From positions 1-8,619 of the forward strand of contig NW_021828381.1 of assembly GCF_006345805.1 (NCBI RefSeq): DNA of 8,619 nt, read 5' to 3'. Under the pieces are notes generated by a model. The model ran no database searches. It had not been told where the DNA came from and was given only the letters and a program-made list of their open reading frames with translations. The stretch comes from Octopus sinensis (taxonomy: Eukaryota). Shown piece after piece: positions 1-8,619 of this stretch (within the stretch, counting starts at the first letter, position 1; each line of letters starts with the position of its first letter). The translations under genes and the position numbers were made by a program.

Positions 1-311
1 TTGATCTTTTACATACAAATGTAACAAAAAGGAAACAAAACTTATATAACGTGTGTGATATTTTGCATGCCGAAGGTACGGTCTGCCGAAAAAAAAGTAT
101 TTGATGTTTTATAAATTAGATAATAAAAAAAGCTAATAATGTCAAAAATAATGTGATTTTATTGAAAAATATATTGATTCCTATTTTATAGATTAGCCAT
201 AGCGCTAAATAAAAACTTAAACCTAACTCAAAACAGAGTTCTACCCTATCTAGAACCCTAATGTTAATAATTTTAAAAAAATTTTGATTTTATAGAATAA
301 TATTATGTCAC

Positions 312-347
312 ATGGGCGACTTGAAGCCTATGGGTGACCTGAAGCTT
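312..347 (+). repeat. Two-copy 18-bp tandem direct repeat
   Basis: ATGGGCGACTTGAAGCCT (312-329) and ATGGGTGACCTGAAGCTT (330-347): 15/18 identical, all three differences are C/T transitions. Confidence 0.7.
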
Positions 348-353
348 TTACGT

Positions 354-367
354 GTTGCCACGGTAAC
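354..367. promoter_or_regulatory. Candidate RFX X-box
   Basis: GTTGCC-AC-GGTAAC is an imperfect palindrome matching the GTNRCC-N(0-3)-RGYAAC X-box consensus. Motif match only, no functional evidence. Confidence 0.25.
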
Positions 368-523
368 CATGATACGTTACATAATAAAATATCATGTAGC
401 TCATATAGACACAATTCTAAAGTAATTTGTTATTTTCAAATAAAAAAAATAATTAAAACTGTATATATTAAATGGCTGACCTATTTTCTGTAGAATTTTG
501 TCGCATGGTATTGGTGTTATCTA

Positions 524-685
524 ATGTCGCACTTCAGGGCTTATGTCAAGGATATTAATGAATACGACAACATTAAAAAGATATTATGTGGAATTCAAAT
601 TGAGGATACCAATACTCAGAGGAATCGCAGATTGCGAAAAAAATCCTCACATTTTTTCGTGAGGAACAATAAGTTTTACGTTTAA
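524..685 (+). CDS. 53-aa ORF not in the supplied track, resembling the N-terminal segment of GIN1/Ginger-type (gypsy-like) integrases; possibly a truncated exon
   Basis: Manual translation gives MSHFRAYVKDINEYDNIKKILCGIQIEDTNTQRNRRLRKKSSHFFVRNNKFYV*. The frame is open from 494, just after a TTTTCTGTAG acceptor-like sequence. The resemblance is by eye only. Confidence 0.3.
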   Translation: MSHFRAYVKDINEYDNIKKILCGIQIEDTNTQRNRRLRKKSSHFFVRNNKFYV

Positions 686-725
686 TTCTAATTTAATTTA
701 GACTGTTTCTGAAAGGAAATATTGA

Positions 726-1609
726 ATTGGCGAAGGCGGCCATAAACTTGCCTTAGTTACTCCGCAAAAGTCAGCACTAGTCCTAAAGGGGATTCCGCGA
801 TGGATCTCCAATCGGGACCTAGAGCTGCACCTGAAGGAAACCCTCAGTTCGGTGTTCGTTCTCGAGCGATTCACGCGAGATGGTCTCAACATCCCAGTTG
901 CTAAGCTGACGCTTGACTCACGAGCTGAAGCTACTTCTTTGATCCGCACCGGAATCACAGCTGGTTTCTGCCTTATCACCTGTGAATGGTTCAGACCTCC
1001 TGTCGTCCGATGTTTCCATTGTCAGAGATTCGGACACCTGTCCCGTAACTGTCAAGAAAAAGCCCGGTGCTTATACTGCGGCAAGGACCACGACCGAAGG
1101 GAATGCCCAGGCAGCAAACAAAGTCTAGTGGAGCCCTGCGGTCGGCATTGTATCAATTGTGACCGCCCCGGCCACCTCGCTTCGTATGGTGGATGCCCGA
1201 CGGCCAAAGCTGCAACAGCAGCTAAATGGGCCGCCGCGCAGAAGCAATGCCTCGGTCTCCTAACCCAACCCGCATGGTAATGGTAAAAGCTAAGCCGGTC
1301 ACGCCTATCTGGAAAGTACGGCCGCTAATAACCCCGTGTGTGGCGGACGCCCATACCCAGACGACGCAAGTCGTTGAGGTTGGTGCGCAGAGCATGCAGG
1401 CCCCTGTCGCCGAGGCTGTGAAACCGAGGCCCGTCAGCCCAATAAGGAACGGTACTCAGCAGGCCAAAACGCAGGCGAAGGTAGACTCTCACAACAAGGA
1501 TGCTCTGTTGGAATTTTACCAACGCTGTGTCGACGCACTGCTGAAACTGGGAGTCAAACCCAAGAAGCTAGAAGAGCTCCTATCAGAGAGGAGCTCGCCA
1601 GCAAAATGA
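726..1609 (+). pseudogene. E1 ORF1, gag-like nucleic-acid-binding protein; 5'-truncated, with one -1 frameshift near 1224-1226
   Basis: The frame of the 852 ORF is open back to 726 (includes LVLKGIPRWISNRDLELHL). Knuckles: CFHCQRFGHLSRNC, CLYCGKDHDRREC, CINCDRPGHLASYGGC. The 1226-1609 ORF is its continuation: IWKVRPLITPCVADAHTQT aligns with E2 VWRKPTISRCFDSSTQT. Confidence 0.88.
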
Positions 1610-4215
1610 CCACGTCACTAAAAATCATCGCTGTGAATGCCCGATCTGTCAAGAGACGGCACCTCGACTTCGTTGAGATGGTAAACAGCGGCCATCCTGA
1701 CTTAATCGTCGTCAACGAGTCTAAGCTGAAAGAAGGTCAATGCTTCGAATTGCCAGGATACTGCTCCCTTGACCTGAAATGGAGAAATAACTCTACGCCT
1801 GGGACTGGGACGACTATCTACTACCTGCAAAATCTCAAGACACGTAACCTCAAGACTATCGAACGGAACCTATGCGAATTTATCTCGCTAGAGATTAAAA
1901 CCCAGCGCTTTTGGTTAAAAGTGGGCGGAATATATTGCAAAAACCTTGCTCCATGCATCGGTCTTATCGAAGACTTCTTTGTCAGCTCAAATCATTGCCT
2001 CCTCATCGGTGATCTAAACTCCAAACACACGGCATTTGGTTGTCGCGTGACCAATCGGGACGGCCGGTTACTTGAAAGAGCGGCAGGTAGGCTAGACGTC
2101 TGTGTCCGCACCTCGAAAGCCCGGAACCACCGCTCCCCATTCGGCTGGGACAACCTTTGCGTAGCACTGAGCTCTCAATCAGTCGCGAATCTTATGGGAG
2201 AACCAATAGTACTCGACGATATTGGGAGCGACCACCTGCCAATGCAGGTCTGTGTCCACGTCTCGGTAGACACCCAAATCCGTTGCCCACCACGATACAC
2301 CCTTTCGAACATCAACTGGGCGCACTAACGTTATGCTCTGAACTTGTTCTTTCGCAACAACGTACGCCCAGGCAGCTATCAATCTACCTCGGACATCGAC
2401 AACTCGGGCGCCGAATTGACGGACTTCATGCGACTCTACTTGGAAGCCCACGCTAGGAGGGTGCGCCCAACTAGCAAGGGCATTACACATCAAAAACCCC
2501 AAACTTCTCCAACTTCTGGGCGAAAAGAAACGCCTGCGAAACAAGCTCAAACGCTGTGCCGACCCAACGGACCAAGGTACCCTAAGGTCGGAAATCTCTC
2601 TGCTCAACCACAAATTGAACTCACAAGAAAGAAAGATCTTGAGAGGATGTGGAAGAAGGCCTGCTCTGGTCTTAATCACAGGAACCCAAACTTCTGGATA
2701 GCCTACAACAGACTCTCTAATCATCTCGTGAACTCTCCGGCACCAGAATTATCGAACTCAGCTGGAATGCCTGCGTCGGTGGAGGAAATCCCCAACATAT
2801 TTGCTGATCACCTGGACCGTCCTCTGCCGGACCATGAGGATCGCTGGGGAAACTCACATGCCAGTCCTATAGACCAAGCAGACTCCCTATCTGTTGATCA
2901 TCACCCAATCACCGCCGCTGAGGTGACCTGGGCCATCCTCTCGGCGAGGGACAACGCACCGGGGCATGACATGCTACCAATGAAAATGTTCAAAGAAGGC
3001 CCTCCGGAACTGTCTGAGTTTTTGGCACGCCTCTTCTCGGCTAGTCTTCGCTGGAGCCACGTTCCAAGTGCCTGGAAAGTCGCCGAAATCCGGATGATCA
3101 AGAAACCTGCAAAACCAGCTAACCTTGCCAGCAGCTATCGACCCATCAGTCTAATACCAACGATCTCGAGGCTTATGGAAAAAAATTATGACCAAACGCT
3201 TCGACTCCTTCGCTGAGCAGAAATGCGTGCTTCTGCCCCAGCAGTGGGGCTTCCGCTCGGGGCGCAGCTGCGCCGATTGTTTTCTGATTCTCCAATCGAT
3301 GGCTTTGAAAGCAATGGAGTTCAACGAAACTTTATCTTGCATCTGCCTTGACATCTCTAAAGCATTCGACAGCGTGTACCACCCAGACCTATTGGACAGG
3401 GTTCGCAGTTGTGAGCCAACGAGAGAGGCATTTCTCTGGCTGAATTGCTTTCTTTCTAACCGTATCTCCTTTGTGTCCCAGTCGGGCTTTCACTCCAGAG
3501 ATATACATCTCCGAAGGGGTGTCCCGCAGGGATCCAGTCTCAGCCCGCTGCTGTTCAACCTTGTGATGAGCAGCTTCCCTTCCTTCCCCAATCCGCGGAC
3601 AACTTTCCTCTTGTACGCTGATGACGTCCTCATTATGGATATTTCAAAAAGCCCCGCACTCTCGGAGCACCGTCTTTCCAGCTACATCGGAATGATAGAG
3701 ACCTGGTGTCGGGGTAAACAACTATCCATTGCTATGGACAAGTCGGCGTACCTTGAAATTAACTCACGGCGCAAATCGAGGCAAGAGCCTGAGATTCTCA
3801 GAAGACTTCCCCGCCCGAGCCACATTCGCTATCTGGGCTTGACGGTAGACTCTAACTCGGAGTACTTACTGCACATCACCCAAAAAAGGAAAAAGGCCGT
3901 TGCGGCCCTTCGCTTCCTGAGGGGTATGCATTTGGCCCCGACACTTTTCTGTTTGTCTTTCGCGCGACGATCCTCCCAAGTCTCTTGTATGGGATGGAGG
4001 CGTGGCACTATTCAAACCAATTCGGAAAAATATTGAAAAAATGTGAGAAGATCCGTCGCTATGCGTTAAAGCTAGCGTACAGATTGGATCTACGCGCCCC
4101 GCTACCCAACTGGGCAGAGGAGAAATCTCCACTAATCGAGAAAGTCATCCTTGATTCCATCCGAACTTTTCGTCGGCGGTCTCAGGTGACCGATCTTTTC
4201 GTGGATCGCGTCTGA
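1606..4215 (+). pseudogene. E1 ORF2, AP-endonuclease plus reverse transcriptase, disrupted
   Basis: APE motifs VNARS, VNESK, GDLNSKH, WD, GSDH. RT motifs YRPISL, QWGFR, LDISKAFD, GVPQGS, YADD (3614-3625), YLG. Lesions versus E2: in-frame TAA at 2326-2328, +1 at ~2500, -1 at ~2613, +1 in A7 at 3179-3185, -1 at ~3940. Confidence 0.95.
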
Positions 4216-4371
4216 AATTCAATCAGAGAGTGACTCTTCAAAACCCGCTCATATATTCCCTTAGGACGAATCTCGCAGAGCTCGACTGTCTTCGCAGTCG
4301 TCTCGTTTAACCTCGTCCACCTTTTTACTTAGTCTCTGTTTTACTTACAATAAAACTTTCCATTCATTCCT
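4216..4371 (+). other. E1 3'UTR with stem-loop, AATAAA and short TTCC(A/T)-type tail
   Basis: Follows the ORF2 stop. CGACTG/CAGTCG hairpin (4283-4300) inside GGACGA/TCGTCC (4264-4269/4313-4318). AATAAA at 4349-4354. The terminal motif is shared with E2. Confidence 0.75.
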
Positions 4372-4373
4372 GA

Positions 4374-5069
4374 GGTTTTACTTTCCAACGGTTCTACAAA
4401 AATGGACGGAGTATACCTGTTGGAAAGTTGAGTCTGAATTCGAGGGCAGAAGCCACTTCGCTTGTAAGGATGGGAATCGAAGTGGGATTTCAAAAAATAC
4501 GATGCGAATGGTTTAAAAACCCAGCAACAAGATGCTTTCGCTGCCAACAATTTGGTCACATTGCTAACTTCTGCAAAGAAGTGGAAAGATGTCTTTTCTG
4601 TGGTGGTGATCATAATATGAAAATGTGCCCGATTAAAGGAAAAACTGAGAAAAAATGTATAAACTGCGGTCTGAGTGGGCATTTGGCTTGCTACGGTGGC
4701 TGCTCTTCAGCTAAGGCAGCCACTGAACAACTAAAAAAGCAGCTCAGTGCCAGGGACAGACTGGCCAAAGCAGAACACTCAAAAACTGTATGGTCAAAAG
4801 CGGAGGCCGTTGAATCTGTATGGCGAAAACCCACAATTTCCCGCTGTTTTGACTCCTCAACGCAAACAGATGTTAGTGAAGACGCAACTTTGCCTCCCAA
4901 TACACAACACACAGAGCCTCCAACCCGCTTTAAGAGGAAAGCACCAACTATCGACGTTGAGCTTACCTCTATGATTCGCAAAATAATCGCTATATGCGAT
5001 GAAAAAGGCCTCGATATCAACAATCTGTTGTCCCTTTCTCTTGGAAGGGAAAGGATTGATCAGGCGTGA
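4374..5069 (+). CDS. E2 ORF1 (gag-like, three CCHC knuckles), lacking its N-terminus
   Basis: The frame is open upstream of the tracked 4428 start back to 4374. GFTFQRFYKNGRSIPVGKLSLNSR aligns with E1 VFVLERFTRDGLNIPVAKLTLDSR. Knuckles: CFRCQQFGHIANFC, CLFCGGDHNMKMC, CINCGLSGHLACYGGC. Confidence 0.9.
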   Translation, partial: GFTFQRFYKNGRSIPVGKLSLNSRAEATSLVRMGIEVGFQKIRCEWFKNPATRCFRCQQFGHIANFCKEVERCLFCGGDHNMKMCPIKGKTEKKCINCGLSGHLACYGGCSSAKAATEQLKKQLSARDRLAKAEHSKTVWSKAEAVESVWRKPTISRCFDSSTQTDVSEDATLPPNTQHTEPPTRFKRKAPTIDVELTSMIRKIIAICDEKGLDINNLLSLSLGRERIDQA

Positions 5070-7660
5070 GCCCCTTTCTGTCTATTATCGCTGTGAACGC
5101 ACGTTCTCTAAAGAGAAGGCGTTCAGAGATTGAGGATATGTTATCCCATAACCCCGTGGACCTTTTGATCGTAAACGAAACAAAAATCAAAAAACATGAT
5201 GATTACTACTTGGATGGCTATCGTTCCCTTGATATTAAGTGGAAGCCGGGCTCGATCGCTGGAACAGGCACTTCTATCTACTACAAATCAACTCTAAGGG
5301 TGAAAAATCTAAAAATTGTGTCCGAGGAATTGTGTGAATTCCTCACAATCGACGTCCTTCTGGAAAAAGGGTGGGTAACAATCGGAGGGATGTACTCAAA
5401 ATCCCTTTCCAATTATTCATCGCTTATCAAGGACTTTTTTGCCGATAAACACAATCATTTGTCAATACTCCTCGGGGATCTAAATGCCAAATGCATCATT
5501 CTTAAGAAGCTTTCAGAATCTCTCAGTTTCTCGGTCATCACATCAAAAACCCCAAATCATTACTCACCAGGAGGGTGGGACTATTTGGGCGTAGCATTGG
5601 TCTCTATGTCTACTCTTCAATTTATGGAACAACCGTACACCTTAAATGATATTGGAAGTGACCATCTACCAATTTTATACAAACTCAACCTTGGACCTTT
5701 AAAGGGTAAACCAACTTTTATACGATATAACCTCTCGACTATAAACTGGGAACACTACCGAAAATGTTTTACACTTTATCTGAGCAATTTCGCTCCTAAA
5801 CTTGACGAAAATTCTTCATCTGAGGACCTCGAGAAGTCTAGCAATTCCCTTATTGGATACATAAAGTCTTATCTGGAAACATATTCTACAAAAATCGTCT
5901 CAAACAATAGGAAAACTCACATGCCAAACATGAATGTTGAAATCCTACTAAGGAAAAAACAATGTCTAAGGAACAAACTCCGGCGCTGCGCAGATTTTCG
6001 TGACCGGTCCGTTTTGGAAAGTGAAATCTTCACCATTACGGAAGAAATAAGAAAATCGGCGAAGGTGGCGAAGGATAAAAAATGGAATACTGAGTGCAAA
6101 AAGCTACATAAAGGAAGTCCAAATTTTTGGAAGGTCTACTCGAAATTAACCTCGACGTCTGAGAAAACTATACCTAAACTGCTAAAACAAGATGGATCCC
6201 CTGCATCTCATGAAGAAATCCCGAACATATTTGCTGATAGTCTCAAAAGAATACAAGAAGTCAATCCGGATACAAATCTATCTGATTCAGCTTTGTTTGA
6301 TATGGAAAAAGAGTTGGAAGACAATCTTAGCTCATTACCAATGTGCTCGGAATCTATAACGTGCAAAGACGTGGAAAATGCAGTTAGATACTCCAAAAAT
6401 AACGCTCCGGGAAAGGACAAGATAACCATGCGCATGTTCAAAGAAGCTCCCAAGCAACTTTACGAATATTTGGGATGTCTCTTCTCCCGCAGTGTGAGCT
6501 TGGGATACGTCCCTTCTTCATGGAAACTGACGGAGGTAAGGATGATACGGAAGCCTGGAAAACCTGGTTACTTGGCGACAAGTTATAGGCCTATAAGCCT
6601 AATTCCTACCATCAGTCGAATAATGGAAAGGGTAATGTTTGAACGACTCTCTGAACACGTCGAGAGAAATGGTTATCTCAAAGACGTGCAGTGGGGCTTT
6701 CGGAGGGGTCGTTCCTGTGCTGACTGTCTTTATACACTCAATTCGTCGATTGTAAAGGCTCTGGATTTCAAAGAGTGTCTGACAATTGTGTCTCTAGACA
6801 TCTCAAAAGCCTTTGATATGGTTTGGCACCTCGGTCTCCTTAGACATCTGGCGAAGTGTCACATAGACAAAGGACTATTCCTATGGCTAAAAGACTTCCT
6901 CCGCGACAGGCGCTCTGTGATAAGCTTTCTGAACTATGACTCGGATGAACTGAAACTTAAAAGAGGCGTCCCTCAAGGATCAGTCCTCAGTCCTCTATTA
7001 TTCAACATTGTGATGAGCAATCTGCCGTCTCCTGTCAACACACGGACGGAAATTTTGATATACGCCGATGATGTTGTAATCCTTGACATTTCATCGAAAC
7101 CTGCCTTATCCGAACAAAGGATTATATCATATATGAATACAGTGGAGCAATGGTGCGATGAAAATATGTTCATTATTGCGCGTGAGAAGTCCGCATTACT
7201 GAGAATCACAGAAAGCAGAAATTTAATAAATTTACCGTGCCTGATCAAGAACATACCTCGACAAAACTCAATTAAATATCTTGGCTTGTTCATCGATGAA
7301 AAGGGAAACTATCTCGAAAACGCAAAATTAAGTAAAAGGAAAGCAACTAATGCTCTGTTCTGCCTGAGGAAGTTAAATTTGGAGCCTGATACTTTCCTCT
7401 ACGTTTTCAATACGGTGATCCTACCGGGACTACTATACGGAAAAGAGGGATGGTACTTCTCTAAAAAGAAGGACACCATCTTAACTAAATTTGAAAAGTC
7501 TCGCAGGCTCGCTTTGAAGCTTGCTTACCACCAAAAAGTTGAAGATCCAATCCCCCTGTGGCTTGAAAGTAAATCCTCCATGGTCGGTGAAACTGTCGAA
7601 AAAGCTATAAGTGGTTATAAATCCAACTCAATTGTCACTGGGACGTACCTGCAGAGGTAG
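5066..7660 (+). CDS. E2 ORF2, APE endonuclease-reverse transcriptase (864 aa), GTG start
   Basis: Uninterrupted ORF. APE motifs VNARS, VNETK, GDLN, WD, GSDH. RT motifs YRPISL, QWGFR, LDISKAFD, GVPQGSVLSPLLF, YADD (7061-7072), YLG. No RNase H or C-terminal CCHC; ends at the same relative position as E1 ORF2. Confidence 0.96.
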   Translation: MSPFLSIIAVNARSLKRRRSEIEDMLSHNPVDLLIVNETKIKKHDDYYLDGYRSLDIKWKPGSIAGTGTSIYYKSTLRVKNLKIVSEELCEFLTIDVLLEKGWVTIGGMYSKSLSNYSSLIKDFFADKHNHLSILLGDLNAKCIILKKLSESLSFSVITSKTPNHYSPGGWDYLGVALVSMSTLQFMEQPYTLNDIGSDHLPILYKLNLGPLKGKPTFIRYNLSTINWEHYRKCFTLYLSNFAPKLDENSSSEDLEKSSNSLIGYIKSYLETYSTKIVSNNRKTHMPNMNVEILLRKKQCLRNKLRRCADFRDRSVLESEIFTITEEIRKSAKVAKDKKWNTECKKLHKGSPNFWKVYSKLTSTSEKTIPKLLKQDGSPASHEEIPNIFADSLKRIQEVNPDTNLSDSALFDMEKELEDNLSSLPMCSESITCKDVENAVRYSKNNAPGKDKITMRMFKEAPKQLYEYLGCLFSRSVSLGYVPSSWKLTEVRMIRKPGKPGYLATSYRPISLIPTISRIMERVMFERLSEHVERNGYLKDVQWGFRRGRSCADCLYTLNSSIVKALDFKECLTIVSLDISKAFDMVWHLGLLRHLAKCHIDKGLFLWLKDFLRDRRSVISFLNYDSDELKLKRGVPQGSVLSPLLFNIVMSNLPSPVNTRTEILIYADDVVILDISSKPALSEQRIISYMNTVEQWCDENMFIIAREKSALLRITESRNLINLPCLIKNIPRQNSIKYLGLFIDEKGNYLENAKLSKRKATNALFCLRKLNLEPDTFLYVFNTVILPGLLYGKEGWYFSKKKDTILTKFEKSRRLALKLAYHQKVEDPIPLWLESKSSMVGETVEKAISGYKSNSIVTGTYLQR

Positions 7661-7687
7661 AAAAGAAAAAAAAAAAAAAAAAAAAAA
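7661..7687 (+). repeat. Poly(A) tract (AAAAG + A22) immediately after the ORF2 stop, internal to the inferred 3'UTR
   Basis: Read directly from the sequence. The family 3'-terminal motif lies ~100-160 nt further downstream. Confidence 0.85.
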
Positions 7688-7783
7688 TTTACTTGAGGGG
7701 GTCTCTCTTTTTTTTTTCTGGAAGAAGTCGATAGGGTAGTCCTATTGTTTCATTATACAAACTCCCCCCTAACCTTTAACCCT

Positions 7784-7820
7784 TCTCTGTTTCCAATAAA
7801 ACTTCCTATTCCTATTCCTA
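7784..7820 (+). other. E2 3'-terminal motif: TCTCTGTTT, CAATAAAACTT and (TTCCTA)3 tail
   Basis: TCTCTGTTT at 7784-7792, AATAAA at 7795-7800, three perfect TTCCTA units at 7803-7820. Counterpart in E1 at 4333-4371. Confidence 0.8.
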
Positions 7821-7829
7821 GTATTTGTT

Positions 7830-8433
7830 TTAGTGGGTGAACAATCCTACACTTTGCCGATTATGCTTCGCAATGATAGGAAGAGCCAACATCGAAGGAT
7901 CAAAAAGCACCGTCGCTATGTACGCTTGGGTGCCACAAGCCAATTATCCCTGTGGTAACTTTTCTGTCACCTTTAACTTAAGCTTATAAAAGTAAAAGGA
8001 TCGATAGGCCACGCTTTCGCGCCTTGCATACGTACTGAACAATGCAAATAAGGTGAGCTTTTACCCTTTCGCGCTATGGTAGATTCTGTTCCACCTGAGC
8101 TCACCTTTGGACATCTGCTTTATTGTTTAGCAGATGTACCGCCCCAGCCAAACTCCCCAAATGACACTGTTTTCAGATCCGATCGACCCCGAACGGGCCT
8201 TACACTGCAAACTTTCCCATTAAGGAAGCACGGTATTACTGAATTAGTAGGAAGACGACTGAGGAAGTGGTCTTACATTGTCGCTGCGGAACAGCTCCCA
8301 CCTATACTATATCCCCAATGTCCTCCTACAATGCCAATCTAGAGTCCAAGCTCAACAGGGTCTTCTTTCCCCGCTGATTGTCACGGGCCCGTTACCCCGT
8401 CTGTGGTTTCGCTAGAGTGCTGATAGGGACAGT

Positions 8434-8464
<31 letters not shown>

Positions 8465-8475
8465 TCAATTAAATT

Positions 8476-8507
<32 letters not shown>
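7830..8507 (-). rRNA. 28S rRNA: Internal fragment of a eukaryotic LSU (28S/26S-type) rRNA gene, from the helix 69 loop to just beyond the A-loop; interrupted at both ends
   Basis: The minus strand reads TATGACTCTCTTAAGGTAGCCAAATGCCTCG...GAGATTCCCACTGTCCC...CAGCGGGGAAAGAAGACCCTGTTGAGCTT...GGGAGTTTGGCTGGGGCGG...CACAGGGATAA...TTTTTGATCCTTCGATG...GGATTGTTCACCCACTAA, all conserved eukaryotic LSU blocks. Confidence 0.97.
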
Positions 8508-8512
8508 TCATA

Positions 8513-8619
8513 TTAATTTGGAGCCTGATACTTTCCTCTACGTTTTCAATACGGTGATCCTACCGGGACTACTATACGGAAAAGAGGGATGGTACTTCTC
8601 TAAAAAGAAGGACACCATC
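8513..8619 (+). mobile_element. Third, heavily 5'-truncated copy of E2 (starts in the C-terminal part of ORF2, runs off the window)
   Basis: 8515-8619 is identical to 7376-7480 (105/105). The match extends to 8513 if one A is lost from TTAAATTT. Confidence 0.93.

What the first reader, a model, noticed from the sequence alone, without database searches (positions are those of the whole stretch)
726..8619. Candidate new rDNA-targeting LINE lineage inserted antisense to LSU rRNA and forming mixed-family arrays
Seen: two junctions between E2-family DNA and LSU rDNA (7829/7830 and 8507-8513), both with the element antisense to the rRNA, plus a sister family E1 stacked directly upstream. Known: the classic rDNA specialists are R2/R4 (restriction-like endonuclease) and R1-clade APE elements, in sense orientation near the H69-H71 region; R5 and R9 are antisense but are restriction-like-endonuclease elements. 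The RT motifs here (LDISKAFDxVxH, GVPQGSxLSPLLF), the CX2CX4HX6C third knuckle and the absence of a C-terminal CCHC look I/Jockey-group, which to my knowledge is not known for rDNA site specificity. Inference: an independently evolved rDNA-targeting APE lineage.
Basis: partly seen in the sequence, partly recalled or inferred. Interest (0 to 1): 0.85.

Follow-up and report, generated by a model that had tools for sequence, protein, structure and literature searches.

The report
Octopus LINEs abutting a 28S fragment
Two damaged copies of an octopus-specific LINE retrotransposon lineage lie head to tail beside a 678-bp, diverged piece of the 28S rRNA gene. Their solitary relatives elsewhere in the octopus genome are not in rDNA, so the data do not support a new rDNA-targeting element.

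Summary
E1 (726-4367) and E2 (4368-7829) are sister APE+RT LINEs. A 28S fragment (7830-8507, antisense, Rfam LSU model ~2266-2945) follows E2. After 7 filler bases, E2 bases 7376-7480 recur exactly (8515-8619).

The window comes from an Octopus genome: E1 is 99.3% identical to an O. sinensis contig. Both copies are 5'-truncated. E2 has also lost its ORF2 ATG and 12 residues of its endonuclease.

The rDNA-targeting inference rests on a single 3' junction.
- The second junction is a 5' junction 680 nt away, or the breakpoint of a 1,139-bp tandem duplication.
- The array's left flank is not rDNA.
- The rDNA piece looks decayed, with 8.4% mismatches at highly conserved positions.
- The three solitary relatives I could fetch all end in non-rDNA sequence. 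One of them is a 70-74% identical E2 relative.

What recurs instead is head-to-tail stacking and a chimera with sense-strand 18S rRNA that was carried into a non-rDNA site. This points to template switching or nick reuse.

Clade placement stays unresolved within the I/Jockey group. The lineage may be the published "unknown I clade" of O. sinensis.

Verdict: an ordinary degenerate LINE patch from a poorly described lineage. rDNA specificity is unproven and unlikely (~0.12).

The parts
1..725 (.). AT-rich (28% GC) left flank, not rDNA. It carries a short ORF (524-685) that resembles an LTR-retrotransposon pol fragment. This is context, not part of the LINEs.
   Evidence: No Rfam hit, and no match to loci L004-L007.
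726..4367 (+). E1: a 5'-truncated, damaged LINE copy (51% GC). It starts at codon 170 of the 463-aa ORF1 seen in the full-length O. sinensis copy. The 3' end is ...AATAAAACTTTCCATTCATTCC.
   Evidence: 99.3% identical to L004 9121-11398. L004 continues 5' with an intact ORF1.
726..1609 (+). E1 ORF1 remnant: an RRM-like region and three CCHC knuckles. There is a 1-bp frameshift near 1233-1235.
1606..4213 (+). E1 ORF2 (APE + RT). The ATGA stop/start overlap lies at 1606. There is an in-frame TAA at 2326-2328, frame changes near 2492, 2611, 3180 and 3940, and a stop at 4211-4213.
   Evidence: The three indels relative to L004 are 1-bp homopolymer differences.
4368..7829 (+). E2: a sister-family LINE copy (41% GC), 5'-truncated inside ORF1 and joined directly to the E1 3' end.
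   Evidence: Homology to the E2-like copy in L005 begins at about 4371-4374, and L005 continues 5'. ORF2 is 44-47% identical to E1.
4383..5069 (+). E2 ORF1 remnant (228 codons, no start codon) with three CCHC knuckles.
5066..7660 (+). E2 ORF2: 864 codons, open, with APE (aa 1-~215) and RT (aa 494-741). It begins GTG because the ATG region is deleted (window PFLSII versus PFMSSYLTII in L005). A 12-aa in-frame deletion follows GDLNAKC, between bases 5494 and 5495.
7661..7829 (+). E2 3' UTR: an A22 run (7666-7687), a T10 run (7708-7717), a GAAGAAG motif plus hairpin, then AATAAA and (TTCCTA)3. The last 11 nt (7819-7829) are of uncertain origin.
7830..8507 (-). 678-bp fragment of 28S rDNA (Rfam LSU model ~2266-2945). 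It contains uninterrupted R2-site and R1-site regions. It is diverged at conserved positions and is probably an orphan or decayed copy.
   Evidence: 590.7 bits; 36 of 431 highly conserved consensus positions are mismatched.
8508..8514 (.). 7-nt filler (tcatatt) at the second junction.
8515..8619 (+). Second E2 segment, identical to 7376-7480 and running off the window. It is either a 5'-truncated E2 copy or the start of a second 1,139-bp tandem unit.
   Evidence: (D1, 100% over 105 nt).

Best explanation
The window is a transposon-rich, non-functional patch of an Octopus genome (O. sinensis or a very close relative).

E1 and E2 are inactivated, 5'-truncated copies of two sister families of an octopus-restricted APE-type LINE lineage. 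These elements move by ordinary target-primed reverse transcription. The endonuclease nicks at A/T-rich trinucleotides. The RT primes on an RNA whose 3' end is AATAAA plus a short repeat.

E2's 3' end was joined once, antisense, to a diverged 28S rDNA fragment. This was an incidental insertion into an orphan or decaying rDNA copy, not site-specific targeting. The second 'junction' is either the 5' end of another truncated E2 or the breakpoint of a 1.14-kb local tandem duplication of [E2 3' end + rDNA].

The head-to-tail E1|E2 stacking comes from RT template jumping onto another LINE RNA, or from re-use of the nick at a resident element's 3' end.

Shown: the anatomy, the host, the damage to both copies, the non-rDNA flanks of relatives, and the 18S chimera.

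Inferred: the order of events, the template jumping, and the pseudogene status of the rDNA piece.
For: (1) Host and lineage. The exhaustive search found O. sinensis proteins 74% (P0094) and ~99% (P0102) identical to the E2 and E1 ORF2 N-termini. E1 is 99.3% identical to L004.

(2) Both copies are dead. E1 starts at ORF1 codon 170 and has a stop and frameshifts. E2 is 5'-truncated, lacks its ATG, and lacks 12 APE residues that all four octopus relatives keep.

(3) Only one 3' junction with rDNA exists. The array's left flank is non-rDNA, and there is no target-site duplication.

(4) Solitary relatives end in non-rDNA sequence. These are the E2-like copy in L005, E3 in L006 and E4 in L007. Their 3' flanks start AAT, ATT and TTT, like the TTA here. 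This fits an A/T-rich nick preference without a shared motif.

(5) In L007 an 18S 3'-terminal fragment lies in sense directly 5' of E4. The whole [18S+E4] block is bracketed by a 1.82-kb direct repeat of non-rDNA. rRNA sequence was therefore carried in with the insert.

(6) L004 shows a second head-to-tail mixed array without any rDNA.

(7) The rDNA piece has 8.4% mismatches at highly conserved consensus positions and about a dozen broken pairs.

(8) Kilobase-scale local duplications are seen around these elements. This makes the 1,139-bp repeat plausible as a duplication.
Against: - No second copy of the E2 family proper could be retrieved. Its specificity is therefore judged from n=1 plus relatives at 70-74% identity or less. 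In the R1 clade, target changes occur between families.
- Two of five octopus loci show rRNA sequence touching these LINEs, which is more than a random genome sample would give.
- In both arrays the younger, more intact element lies downstream, as expected if successive elements use one fixed nick site. The downstream target of the L004 array is lost at a contig end.
- The antisense orientation of the 28S piece is not what simple template switching to mature rRNA predicts.
- I could not compare the fragment with the functional octopus 28S, so 'decayed' is an inference.
Confidence: 0.6

Rival explanations
1. E2 (and perhaps E1) is a site-specific LINE that nicks the rRNA-sense strand at CACCCACTAA^TAGGGAAC and inserts antisense. 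Successive insertions at the same nick built the E1|E2 array. Later rearrangement replaced the left flank.
For: - The clean E2/28S junction.
- Older E1 lies upstream of younger E2, as expected for repeated use of one site.
- The array in L004 has the same age polarity.
- rRNA sequence lies next to a family member in a second locus.
- No cephalopod rDNA element is listed in a 2024 review, so the niche would be open.
Against: - There is a single 3' junction.
- The second junction is 680 nt away and is of 5' type.
- The left flank is not rDNA.
- The closest retrievable relative (70-74% aa) and two other families sit in non-rDNA sequence.
- The 18S piece in L007 was imported, not targeted.
- The rDNA piece looks decayed.
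- This E2 copy has a deleted endonuclease loop and cannot itself testify to specificity.
Confidence: 0.12
2. A single concatemer made in one integration event by serial template jumping. The RT copied an E2 RNA as far as base 7376. It then jumped, adding 7 untemplated nt, to the 3' end of a read-through transcript of another E2 that sits antisense in rDNA. It copied the 678 nt of antisense 28S plus E2 back to base 4368, and finally jumped to the 3' end of an E1 RNA.
For: - All four segments are co-linear and in the same sense.
- The junctions have 0-7 extra nt, as template jumps do.
- The lineage demonstrably makes chimeras with cellular RNA: 18S-E4 in L007 and an H2B-like copy fused to a 5'-truncated E5 in L004.
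Against: - It needs an antisense rDNA-containing template, and hence at least one source E2 in rDNA, which is unobserved.
- E2 and E2' are 100% identical, which a duplication explains just as well.
- The right end of the event is outside the window.
- There is no direct test.
Confidence: 0.15
3. Assembly artefact. The contig is chimeric or collapsed. The terminal 105-bp repeat of an earlier segment reflects a cycle in the assembly graph rather than real linkage of E2 and rDNA.
For: - The window ends inside an exact repeat of itself.
- The three indels separating this E1 from the L004 copy are all 1-bp homopolymer differences, typical of long-read error.
- No window ORF is on record in the public gene-position index.
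Against: - The E2/28S junction lies in unique sequence well inside the window.
- E2's ORF2 is open over 864 codons, so the sequence is not generally noisy.
- A graph cycle would still imply a real tandem [E2 3' end + rDNA] unit.
Confidence: 0.08

Closest known systems
R1 clade of APE LINEs (R1, RT, R6, R7 in rDNA; TRAS and SART in telomeres)
   Same: - Two ORFs, with three CCHC knuckles in ORF1.
- N-terminal APE plus RT in ORF2.
- An overlapping ATGA stop/start between the ORFs. SART1 uses a UAAUG overlap (own knowledge).
- Arrays and an rDNA location for one copy.
   Different: - ORF2 is only ~860 aa and has no Cys-His motif after the RT.
- Relatives are scattered in non-rDNA sequence.
- The one rDNA copy is antisense to the rRNA.
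- The 3' end is AATAAA plus a short repeat.
- Grouping with R1 references could not be tested.
Jockey clade (jockey, and the Drosophila telomeric HeT-A/TART/TAHRE)
   Same: - ORF2 is APE+RT of ~860-900 aa, without RNase H and without a C-terminal knuckle.
- ORF1 has knuckles.
- Most best-scoring distant hits are ~890-aa, mostly unnamed ORF2s. The named nearest relatives are longer arthropod gene models.
- Head-to-tail mixed-family arrays resemble Drosophila telomeric arrays (own knowledge).
   Different: - No poly(A) tail.
- The PRE_C2HC domain is not detected in the full-length ORF1s, although it is found in a distant relative's ORF1.
- The host is a mollusc, and identity is only 24-30%.
'Unknown I clade' of Octopus sinensis (Martelossi et al. 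2023, PMC10294476)
   Same: - Same host genome.
- Described as 16 elements in the I superfamily, sister to the I-Loa-R1 and Tad1 references, with no reference sequence.
- This fits a lineage whose nearest known relatives are ~25-30% identical.
   Different: Identity with that clade could not be verified. The stored alignment supplement is cut before the O. sinensis rows. That paper reports nothing on targets or arrays.
R2 supergroup rDNA specialists (R2, R4, R5, R8, R9)
   Same: Location of one copy inside 28S, between the R2 site region and the 3' domain.
   Different: Those elements have a single ORF with a C-terminal restriction-like endonuclease and N-terminal zinc fingers. E1 and E2 have an N-terminal APE and a separate ORF1. 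The PDB R2 proteins match only the RT core.
LINE-mediated chimeric retrocopies (U6/L1-type chimeras; R2 end-to-end template jumping)
   Same: The sense 18S 3'-terminal fragment fused to the 5' end of E4 and inserted into non-rDNA. Short fillers at junctions.
   Different: The 28S piece in the window is antisense to the LINEs. Plain switching to mature rRNA therefore does not explain it.

Membership tests
Site-specific (rDNA-targeting) LINE, functional definition | Many independent copies share the same 3' junction nucleotide in the target | tested here: not met
   There is one rDNA 3' junction (7829/7830). The 3' flanks of the E2-like copy, E3 and E4 have no rRNA match. Only 7 junctions could be examined in all, and none from a second E2-family copy.
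Site-specific (rDNA-targeting) LINE, functional definition | The 5' junction lies at or within a few bp of the same target site | tested here: not met
   The left flank of the E1-E2 array is AT-rich non-rDNA. The only other rDNA junction is 680 nt away in the rRNA.
R1 clade | ORF2 with an N-terminal APE endonuclease and RT; ORF1 with three CCHC knuckles | tested here: met
   Pfam Exo_endo_phos, Exo_endo_phos_2, RVT_1 and zf-CCHC. The knuckles can be read in the translations.
R1 clade | A Cys-His motif downstream of RT in ORF2 (own knowledge of R1/TRAS) | tested here: not met
   ORF2 ends ~120 aa after the RT domain, and that tail contains no cysteine. The same holds in E5.
R1 clade | RT groups with the R1, RT and TRAS references in a phylogeny | not testable with these tools
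   No Repbase or Dfam references were available. The PDB holds only the R1Bm and TRAS1 EN domains, which gave no sequence match.
R2/R4/R5/R9 (RLE elements) | Single ORF, C-terminal restriction-like endonuclease, N-terminal zinc-finger/Myb domains | tested here: not met
   There are two ORFs, an N-terminal APE domain, and nothing after the RT. R2 structures align only over the RT core.
Jockey clade | ORF2 = APE + RT, with no RNase H | tested here: met
   ORF2 is 864 aa in E2 and 861 aa in E5.
Jockey clade | ORF1 with a PRE_C2HC domain before the knuckles; poly(A) 3' tail | tested here: not met
   PRE_C2HC is absent from the full-length ORF1s of E1, E3 and E4, but present in the distant relative L003. 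The 3' ends are AATAAA plus TTCCA, TTCCTA, TACC, TTCA or TTCC repeats.
I / LOA / Nimb / Ingi / Tad1 clades | RNase H domain downstream of RT | tested here: not met
   There is no RNase_H hit and no room for one. Some distant hits do carry it.
'Unknown I clade' of O. sinensis (PMC10294476) | Octopus-restricted I-superfamily lineage without a reference sequence | tested here: inconclusive
   The host matches, and the description fits. The published sequences are not in the stored part of the supplement.

The most novel reading that the evidence does not exclude
The E2 family, or the lineage as a whole, has a genuine preference for rDNA or for the 3' ends of resident copies. Octopus would then carry an APE-type LINE lineage outside the R1 and Tx1 clades that evolved target-directed insertion on its own. 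It would insert antisense in 28S, just 3' of the A-loop helix, and would build head-to-tail mixed arrays the way Drosophila telomeric elements do.
Probability: 0.12. Interest if true: 0.6.

Novelty: new member of a known kind. Interest (0 to 1): 0.3.

Why it matters
If rDNA targeting were real, it would be a further independent origin of site specificity among APE LINEs, and the first rDNA element reported in a cephalopod. A 2024 review lists only R4 of Biomphalaria for molluscs.

As the evidence stands, the value is more modest.
- It pins an almost undescribed, octopus-restricted LINE lineage to concrete full-length copies. These are E1 and E5 in VCDQ01007076.1, E3 in VCDQ01013128.1, and E4 in VCDQ01009291.1.
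- It shows that the lineage tends to form head-to-tail arrays and chimeras with cellular RNAs (18S rRNA, and an H2B-like transcript).
- It gives a caution for scans: rRNA sequence next to a LINE is not by itself evidence of rDNA targeting.

Tried and rejected
- **Recovering the window's own contig.** I looked up its ORFs to see past base 8619. E2 ORF2 from GTG, E2 ORF2 from the first ATG, and the E1 240-aa ORF are all absent from the index.
- **Searching JGI metagenome contigs.** Searches for the E2/28S junction and for the fragment's distinctive 28S variant gave 0 hits.
- **Finding more octopus copies.** Two profile searches returned only four O. sinensis proteins.
- **Classifying the endonuclease against solved structures.** There was no significant match to any LINE endonuclease. 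The whole ORF2 matches the L1 and R2 RT cores about equally.
- **Obtaining Repbase clade references.** I tried the supplement of PMC10294476, but the stored file is cut and holds neither the references nor the O. sinensis rows.
- **Consensus folding of the 3' UTRs of seven copies.** They are too divergent, and no pairs were predicted.
- **Distant Logan relatives (L001-L003).** They carry no rRNA and have no usable flanks.
- **Rejected: the 28S piece was copied from mature rRNA by template switching.** The orientation is wrong.
- **Rejected: the E1-E2 array is a simple insertion with a target-site duplication.** The flanks are unrelated.

Full report
**What is in the window.**
The plus strand reads as follows.
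- Bases 1-725 are an AT-rich flank (28% GC) with no RNA-family match.
- E1 runs from 726 to about 4367 (51% GC).
- E2 runs from about 4368 to 7829 (41% GC).
- Bases 7830-8507 are a minus-strand fragment of eukaryotic LSU rRNA.
- Bases 8508-8514 are seven filler bases.
- Bases 8515-8619 are an exact repeat of E2 bases 7376-7480.

The rRNA match scores 590.7 bits. In Rfam model coordinates it runs from about 2266 (UAUGACUCUCUUAAGG...) to 2945 (...GGAUUGUUCACCCACUAA). From my own knowledge of the R2 and R1 target sequences, the fragment includes uninterrupted R2-site and R1-site regions. Junction 2 lies 16 nt 5' of the R2 site, and junction 1 lies about 660 nt 3' of it.

**What the elements are.**
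Both elements have the same plan.
- ORF1 has an RRM-like region and three CCHC knuckles.
- ORF2 has an N-terminal APE endonuclease and an RT.
- There is no RNase H, and no Cys-His motif after the RT.
- ORF2 is about 860 codons long.
- In E1, E4 and E5 the two ORFs overlap by ATGA.

The E1 and E2 ORF2s are 44-47% identical. The word-indexed protein search found nothing above about 30% identity. The exhaustive search then found Octopus sinensis proteins 74% (P0094) and about 99% (P0102) identical to the N-terminal halves of the E2 and E1 ORF2s. It also found two further families at 40% and 32% identity. The nearest non-octopus relatives are arthropod sequences at 26-35% identity.

The host is therefore an Octopus, and the lineage is octopus-restricted as far as these databases show. 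A published survey of mollusc LINEs reports 16 O. sinensis elements as an unnamed 'unknown I clade', sister to the I-Loa-R1 and Tad1 references. That may be this lineage. I could not verify it because the stored supplement is truncated.

**State of the two copies.**
A full-length E1 in O. sinensis contig VCDQ01007076.1 (L004) has an intact 463-codon ORF1. The window's E1 is 99.3% identical to it but begins at codon 170. It carries an in-frame TAA (2326-2328) and several frame changes. The three indels that separate it from the L004 copy are all single-base homopolymer differences. Some 'frameshifts' could therefore be sequencing error.

E2 has three defects.
- It is truncated inside ORF1. The E2-like copy in L005 continues further 5'.
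- It has lost the ATG of ORF2. The window reads PFLSII where L005 reads PFMSSYLTII.
- It lacks 12 residues after GDLNxK in the endonuclease that all four octopus relatives retain.

Neither copy is autonomous.

**Does the lineage target rDNA?**
I fetched every octopus locus the tools could reach. The solitary copies give the following.
- The E2-like element in L005 (70-74% aa identity) ends ...GTTACCTACCTACC. It is followed by sequence with no rRNA match even at E<=1.
- E3 in L006 ends ...AATAAAAATTCATTCATTCATT and is followed by AT-rich DNA.
- E4 in L007 ends ...AATAAAAATTTTCCTTCC and is followed by a locally repeated non-rDNA segment.

All three solitary 3' flanks are non-rDNA. They start with A/T-rich trinucleotides, as does the TTA of the window's junction, and they share no motif.

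In the window itself, the array's left flank is not rDNA and there is no target-site duplication. The second rDNA junction is 680 nt away in the rRNA. It is the 5' end of a truncated E2 or a duplication breakpoint. Evidence for targeting therefore reduces to one junction.

The rDNA piece also differs from the eukaryotic consensus at 36 of 431 highly conserved positions, and it breaks about a dozen helix pairs. I read this as an orphan or decaying copy. I could not compare it with the functional octopus 28S.

**What recurs instead.**
L004 holds a second head-to-tail mixed array with no rDNA. Its order is as follows.
- An old E1.
- An H2B-like ORF fused to a 5'-truncated E5, whose 861-codon ORF2 is intact.
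- A full-length E1.

L007 holds an 18S fragment (model ~1190-1823, reaching the 3' end of 18S). It lies in sense directly 5' of E4. The whole [18S+E4] block is bracketed by a 1.82-kb direct repeat of non-rDNA sequence at 98.9% identity. That geometry means the 18S sequence arrived with the insert. This is as expected if the RT jumped from the 5' end of the LINE RNA to the 3' end of 18S rRNA. The lineage therefore associates with rRNA sequence through RNA-level chimerism, and with its own kind through end-to-end joining. It also sits in regions prone to kilobase-scale duplication.

**Most likely history of the window.**
An E2 RNA was inserted by target-primed reverse transcription at an A/T-rich nick (CACCCACTAA^TAGGG on the rRNA-sense strand) in a 28S fragment. 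The 5'-truncated cDNA was joined to the 3' end of E1, either by a template jump or because E1 already occupied that nick. The repeat of E2 7376-7480 after 678 bp of rDNA and 7 filler bases reflects a 1,139-bp tandem duplication or a second truncated E2.

The rivals are listed below.
- True rDNA specificity: about 0.12.
- A single multi-jump concatemer using a read-through E2-antisense-rDNA transcript: about 0.15.
- Assembly artefact: about 0.08.

In all of these, at most one real insertion into rDNA is documented.

**Comparison with known families.**
The architecture fits the I/Jockey supergroup.
- It fails the R1-clade feature of a post-RT Cys-His motif.
- It fails the I/LOA/Nimb feature of an RNase H domain.
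- It fails the Jockey features of PRE_C2HC and a poly(A) tail.
- It has nothing in common with the RLE elements R2, R4, R5 and R9 beyond the RT core.

Clade placement needs reference sequences that I could not obtain. A 2024 review of TEs in rDNA lists only R4 of Biomphalaria for molluscs. A real octopus rDNA specialist would therefore be new, but the present data do not establish one.

**Verdict.**
The finding is a new member of a known kind: a poorly described LINE lineage. Interest is 0.3.

Noticed in passing
L004 5186-5687 (VCDQ01007076.1): A complete H2B-like histone ORF (5211-5573; Pfam Histone, E=2e-12) sits between the 3' end of an old E1 and a 5'-truncated E5. It has no canonical histone stem-loop. 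This unit and the full-length E1 both begin AAACTTGCAA...ATGGCACCTAA (MAPK...). Either a variant-H2B mRNA was retro-copied by template switching, or the E1 5' end derives from an H2B gene.
   Followed up: partly
L007 6069-14536 (VCDQ01009291.1): A block of [18S 3' fragment + full-length E4] (7887-12720) is flanked by a 1.82-kb direct repeat at 98.9% identity, in target-site-duplication geometry. A 5-kb inverted copy of the region is also present. This is either an unusually long duplication accompanying a LINE insertion or a complex local rearrangement.
   Followed up: partly
window 7661-7720; L006 12505-12590: Right after the ORF2 stop, E2 has an A22 run followed by GAGGGGG...TCTC and a T10 run. 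E3 has A18-GAGGG...CCCTC-T6. This may be a conserved long hairpin in the 3' UTR. A downstream GAAGAAG motif plus hairpin differs between E2 (ATAGG/CCTAT) and the E2-like copy (GGTAAG/CTTACC) while keeping the pairing.
   Followed up: partly
window 524-685: A short ORF (…RRLRKKSSHFFVRNNKFYV) in the AT-rich left flank resembles the region upstream of integrase in LTR-retrotransposon pol proteins. It suggests that the flank is itself old transposon debris.
   Followed up: no
window 1603-1609; L007 9998-10004; window 5063-5069: ORF1 and ORF2 overlap by ATGA (stop and start sharing bases) in E1, E4 and E5, which suggests termination-reinitiation. The window's E2 has GTGA and has lost the nearby ATG.
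   Followed up: partly
L004 3318-5042: A 1.7-kb minisatellite (units such as AGGCTCAGAAGCCCAGAAAGCTCAGAAGCATAC) has expanded inside the 3' part of the old E1 copy.
   Followed up: no
L005 7745-9662 and 11246-14189: The E2-like copy is interrupted by two insertions. The first encodes a fragment that looks like the C-terminal part of a DDE transposase (…NPIELAWSTFKAEVKK…).
   Followed up: no
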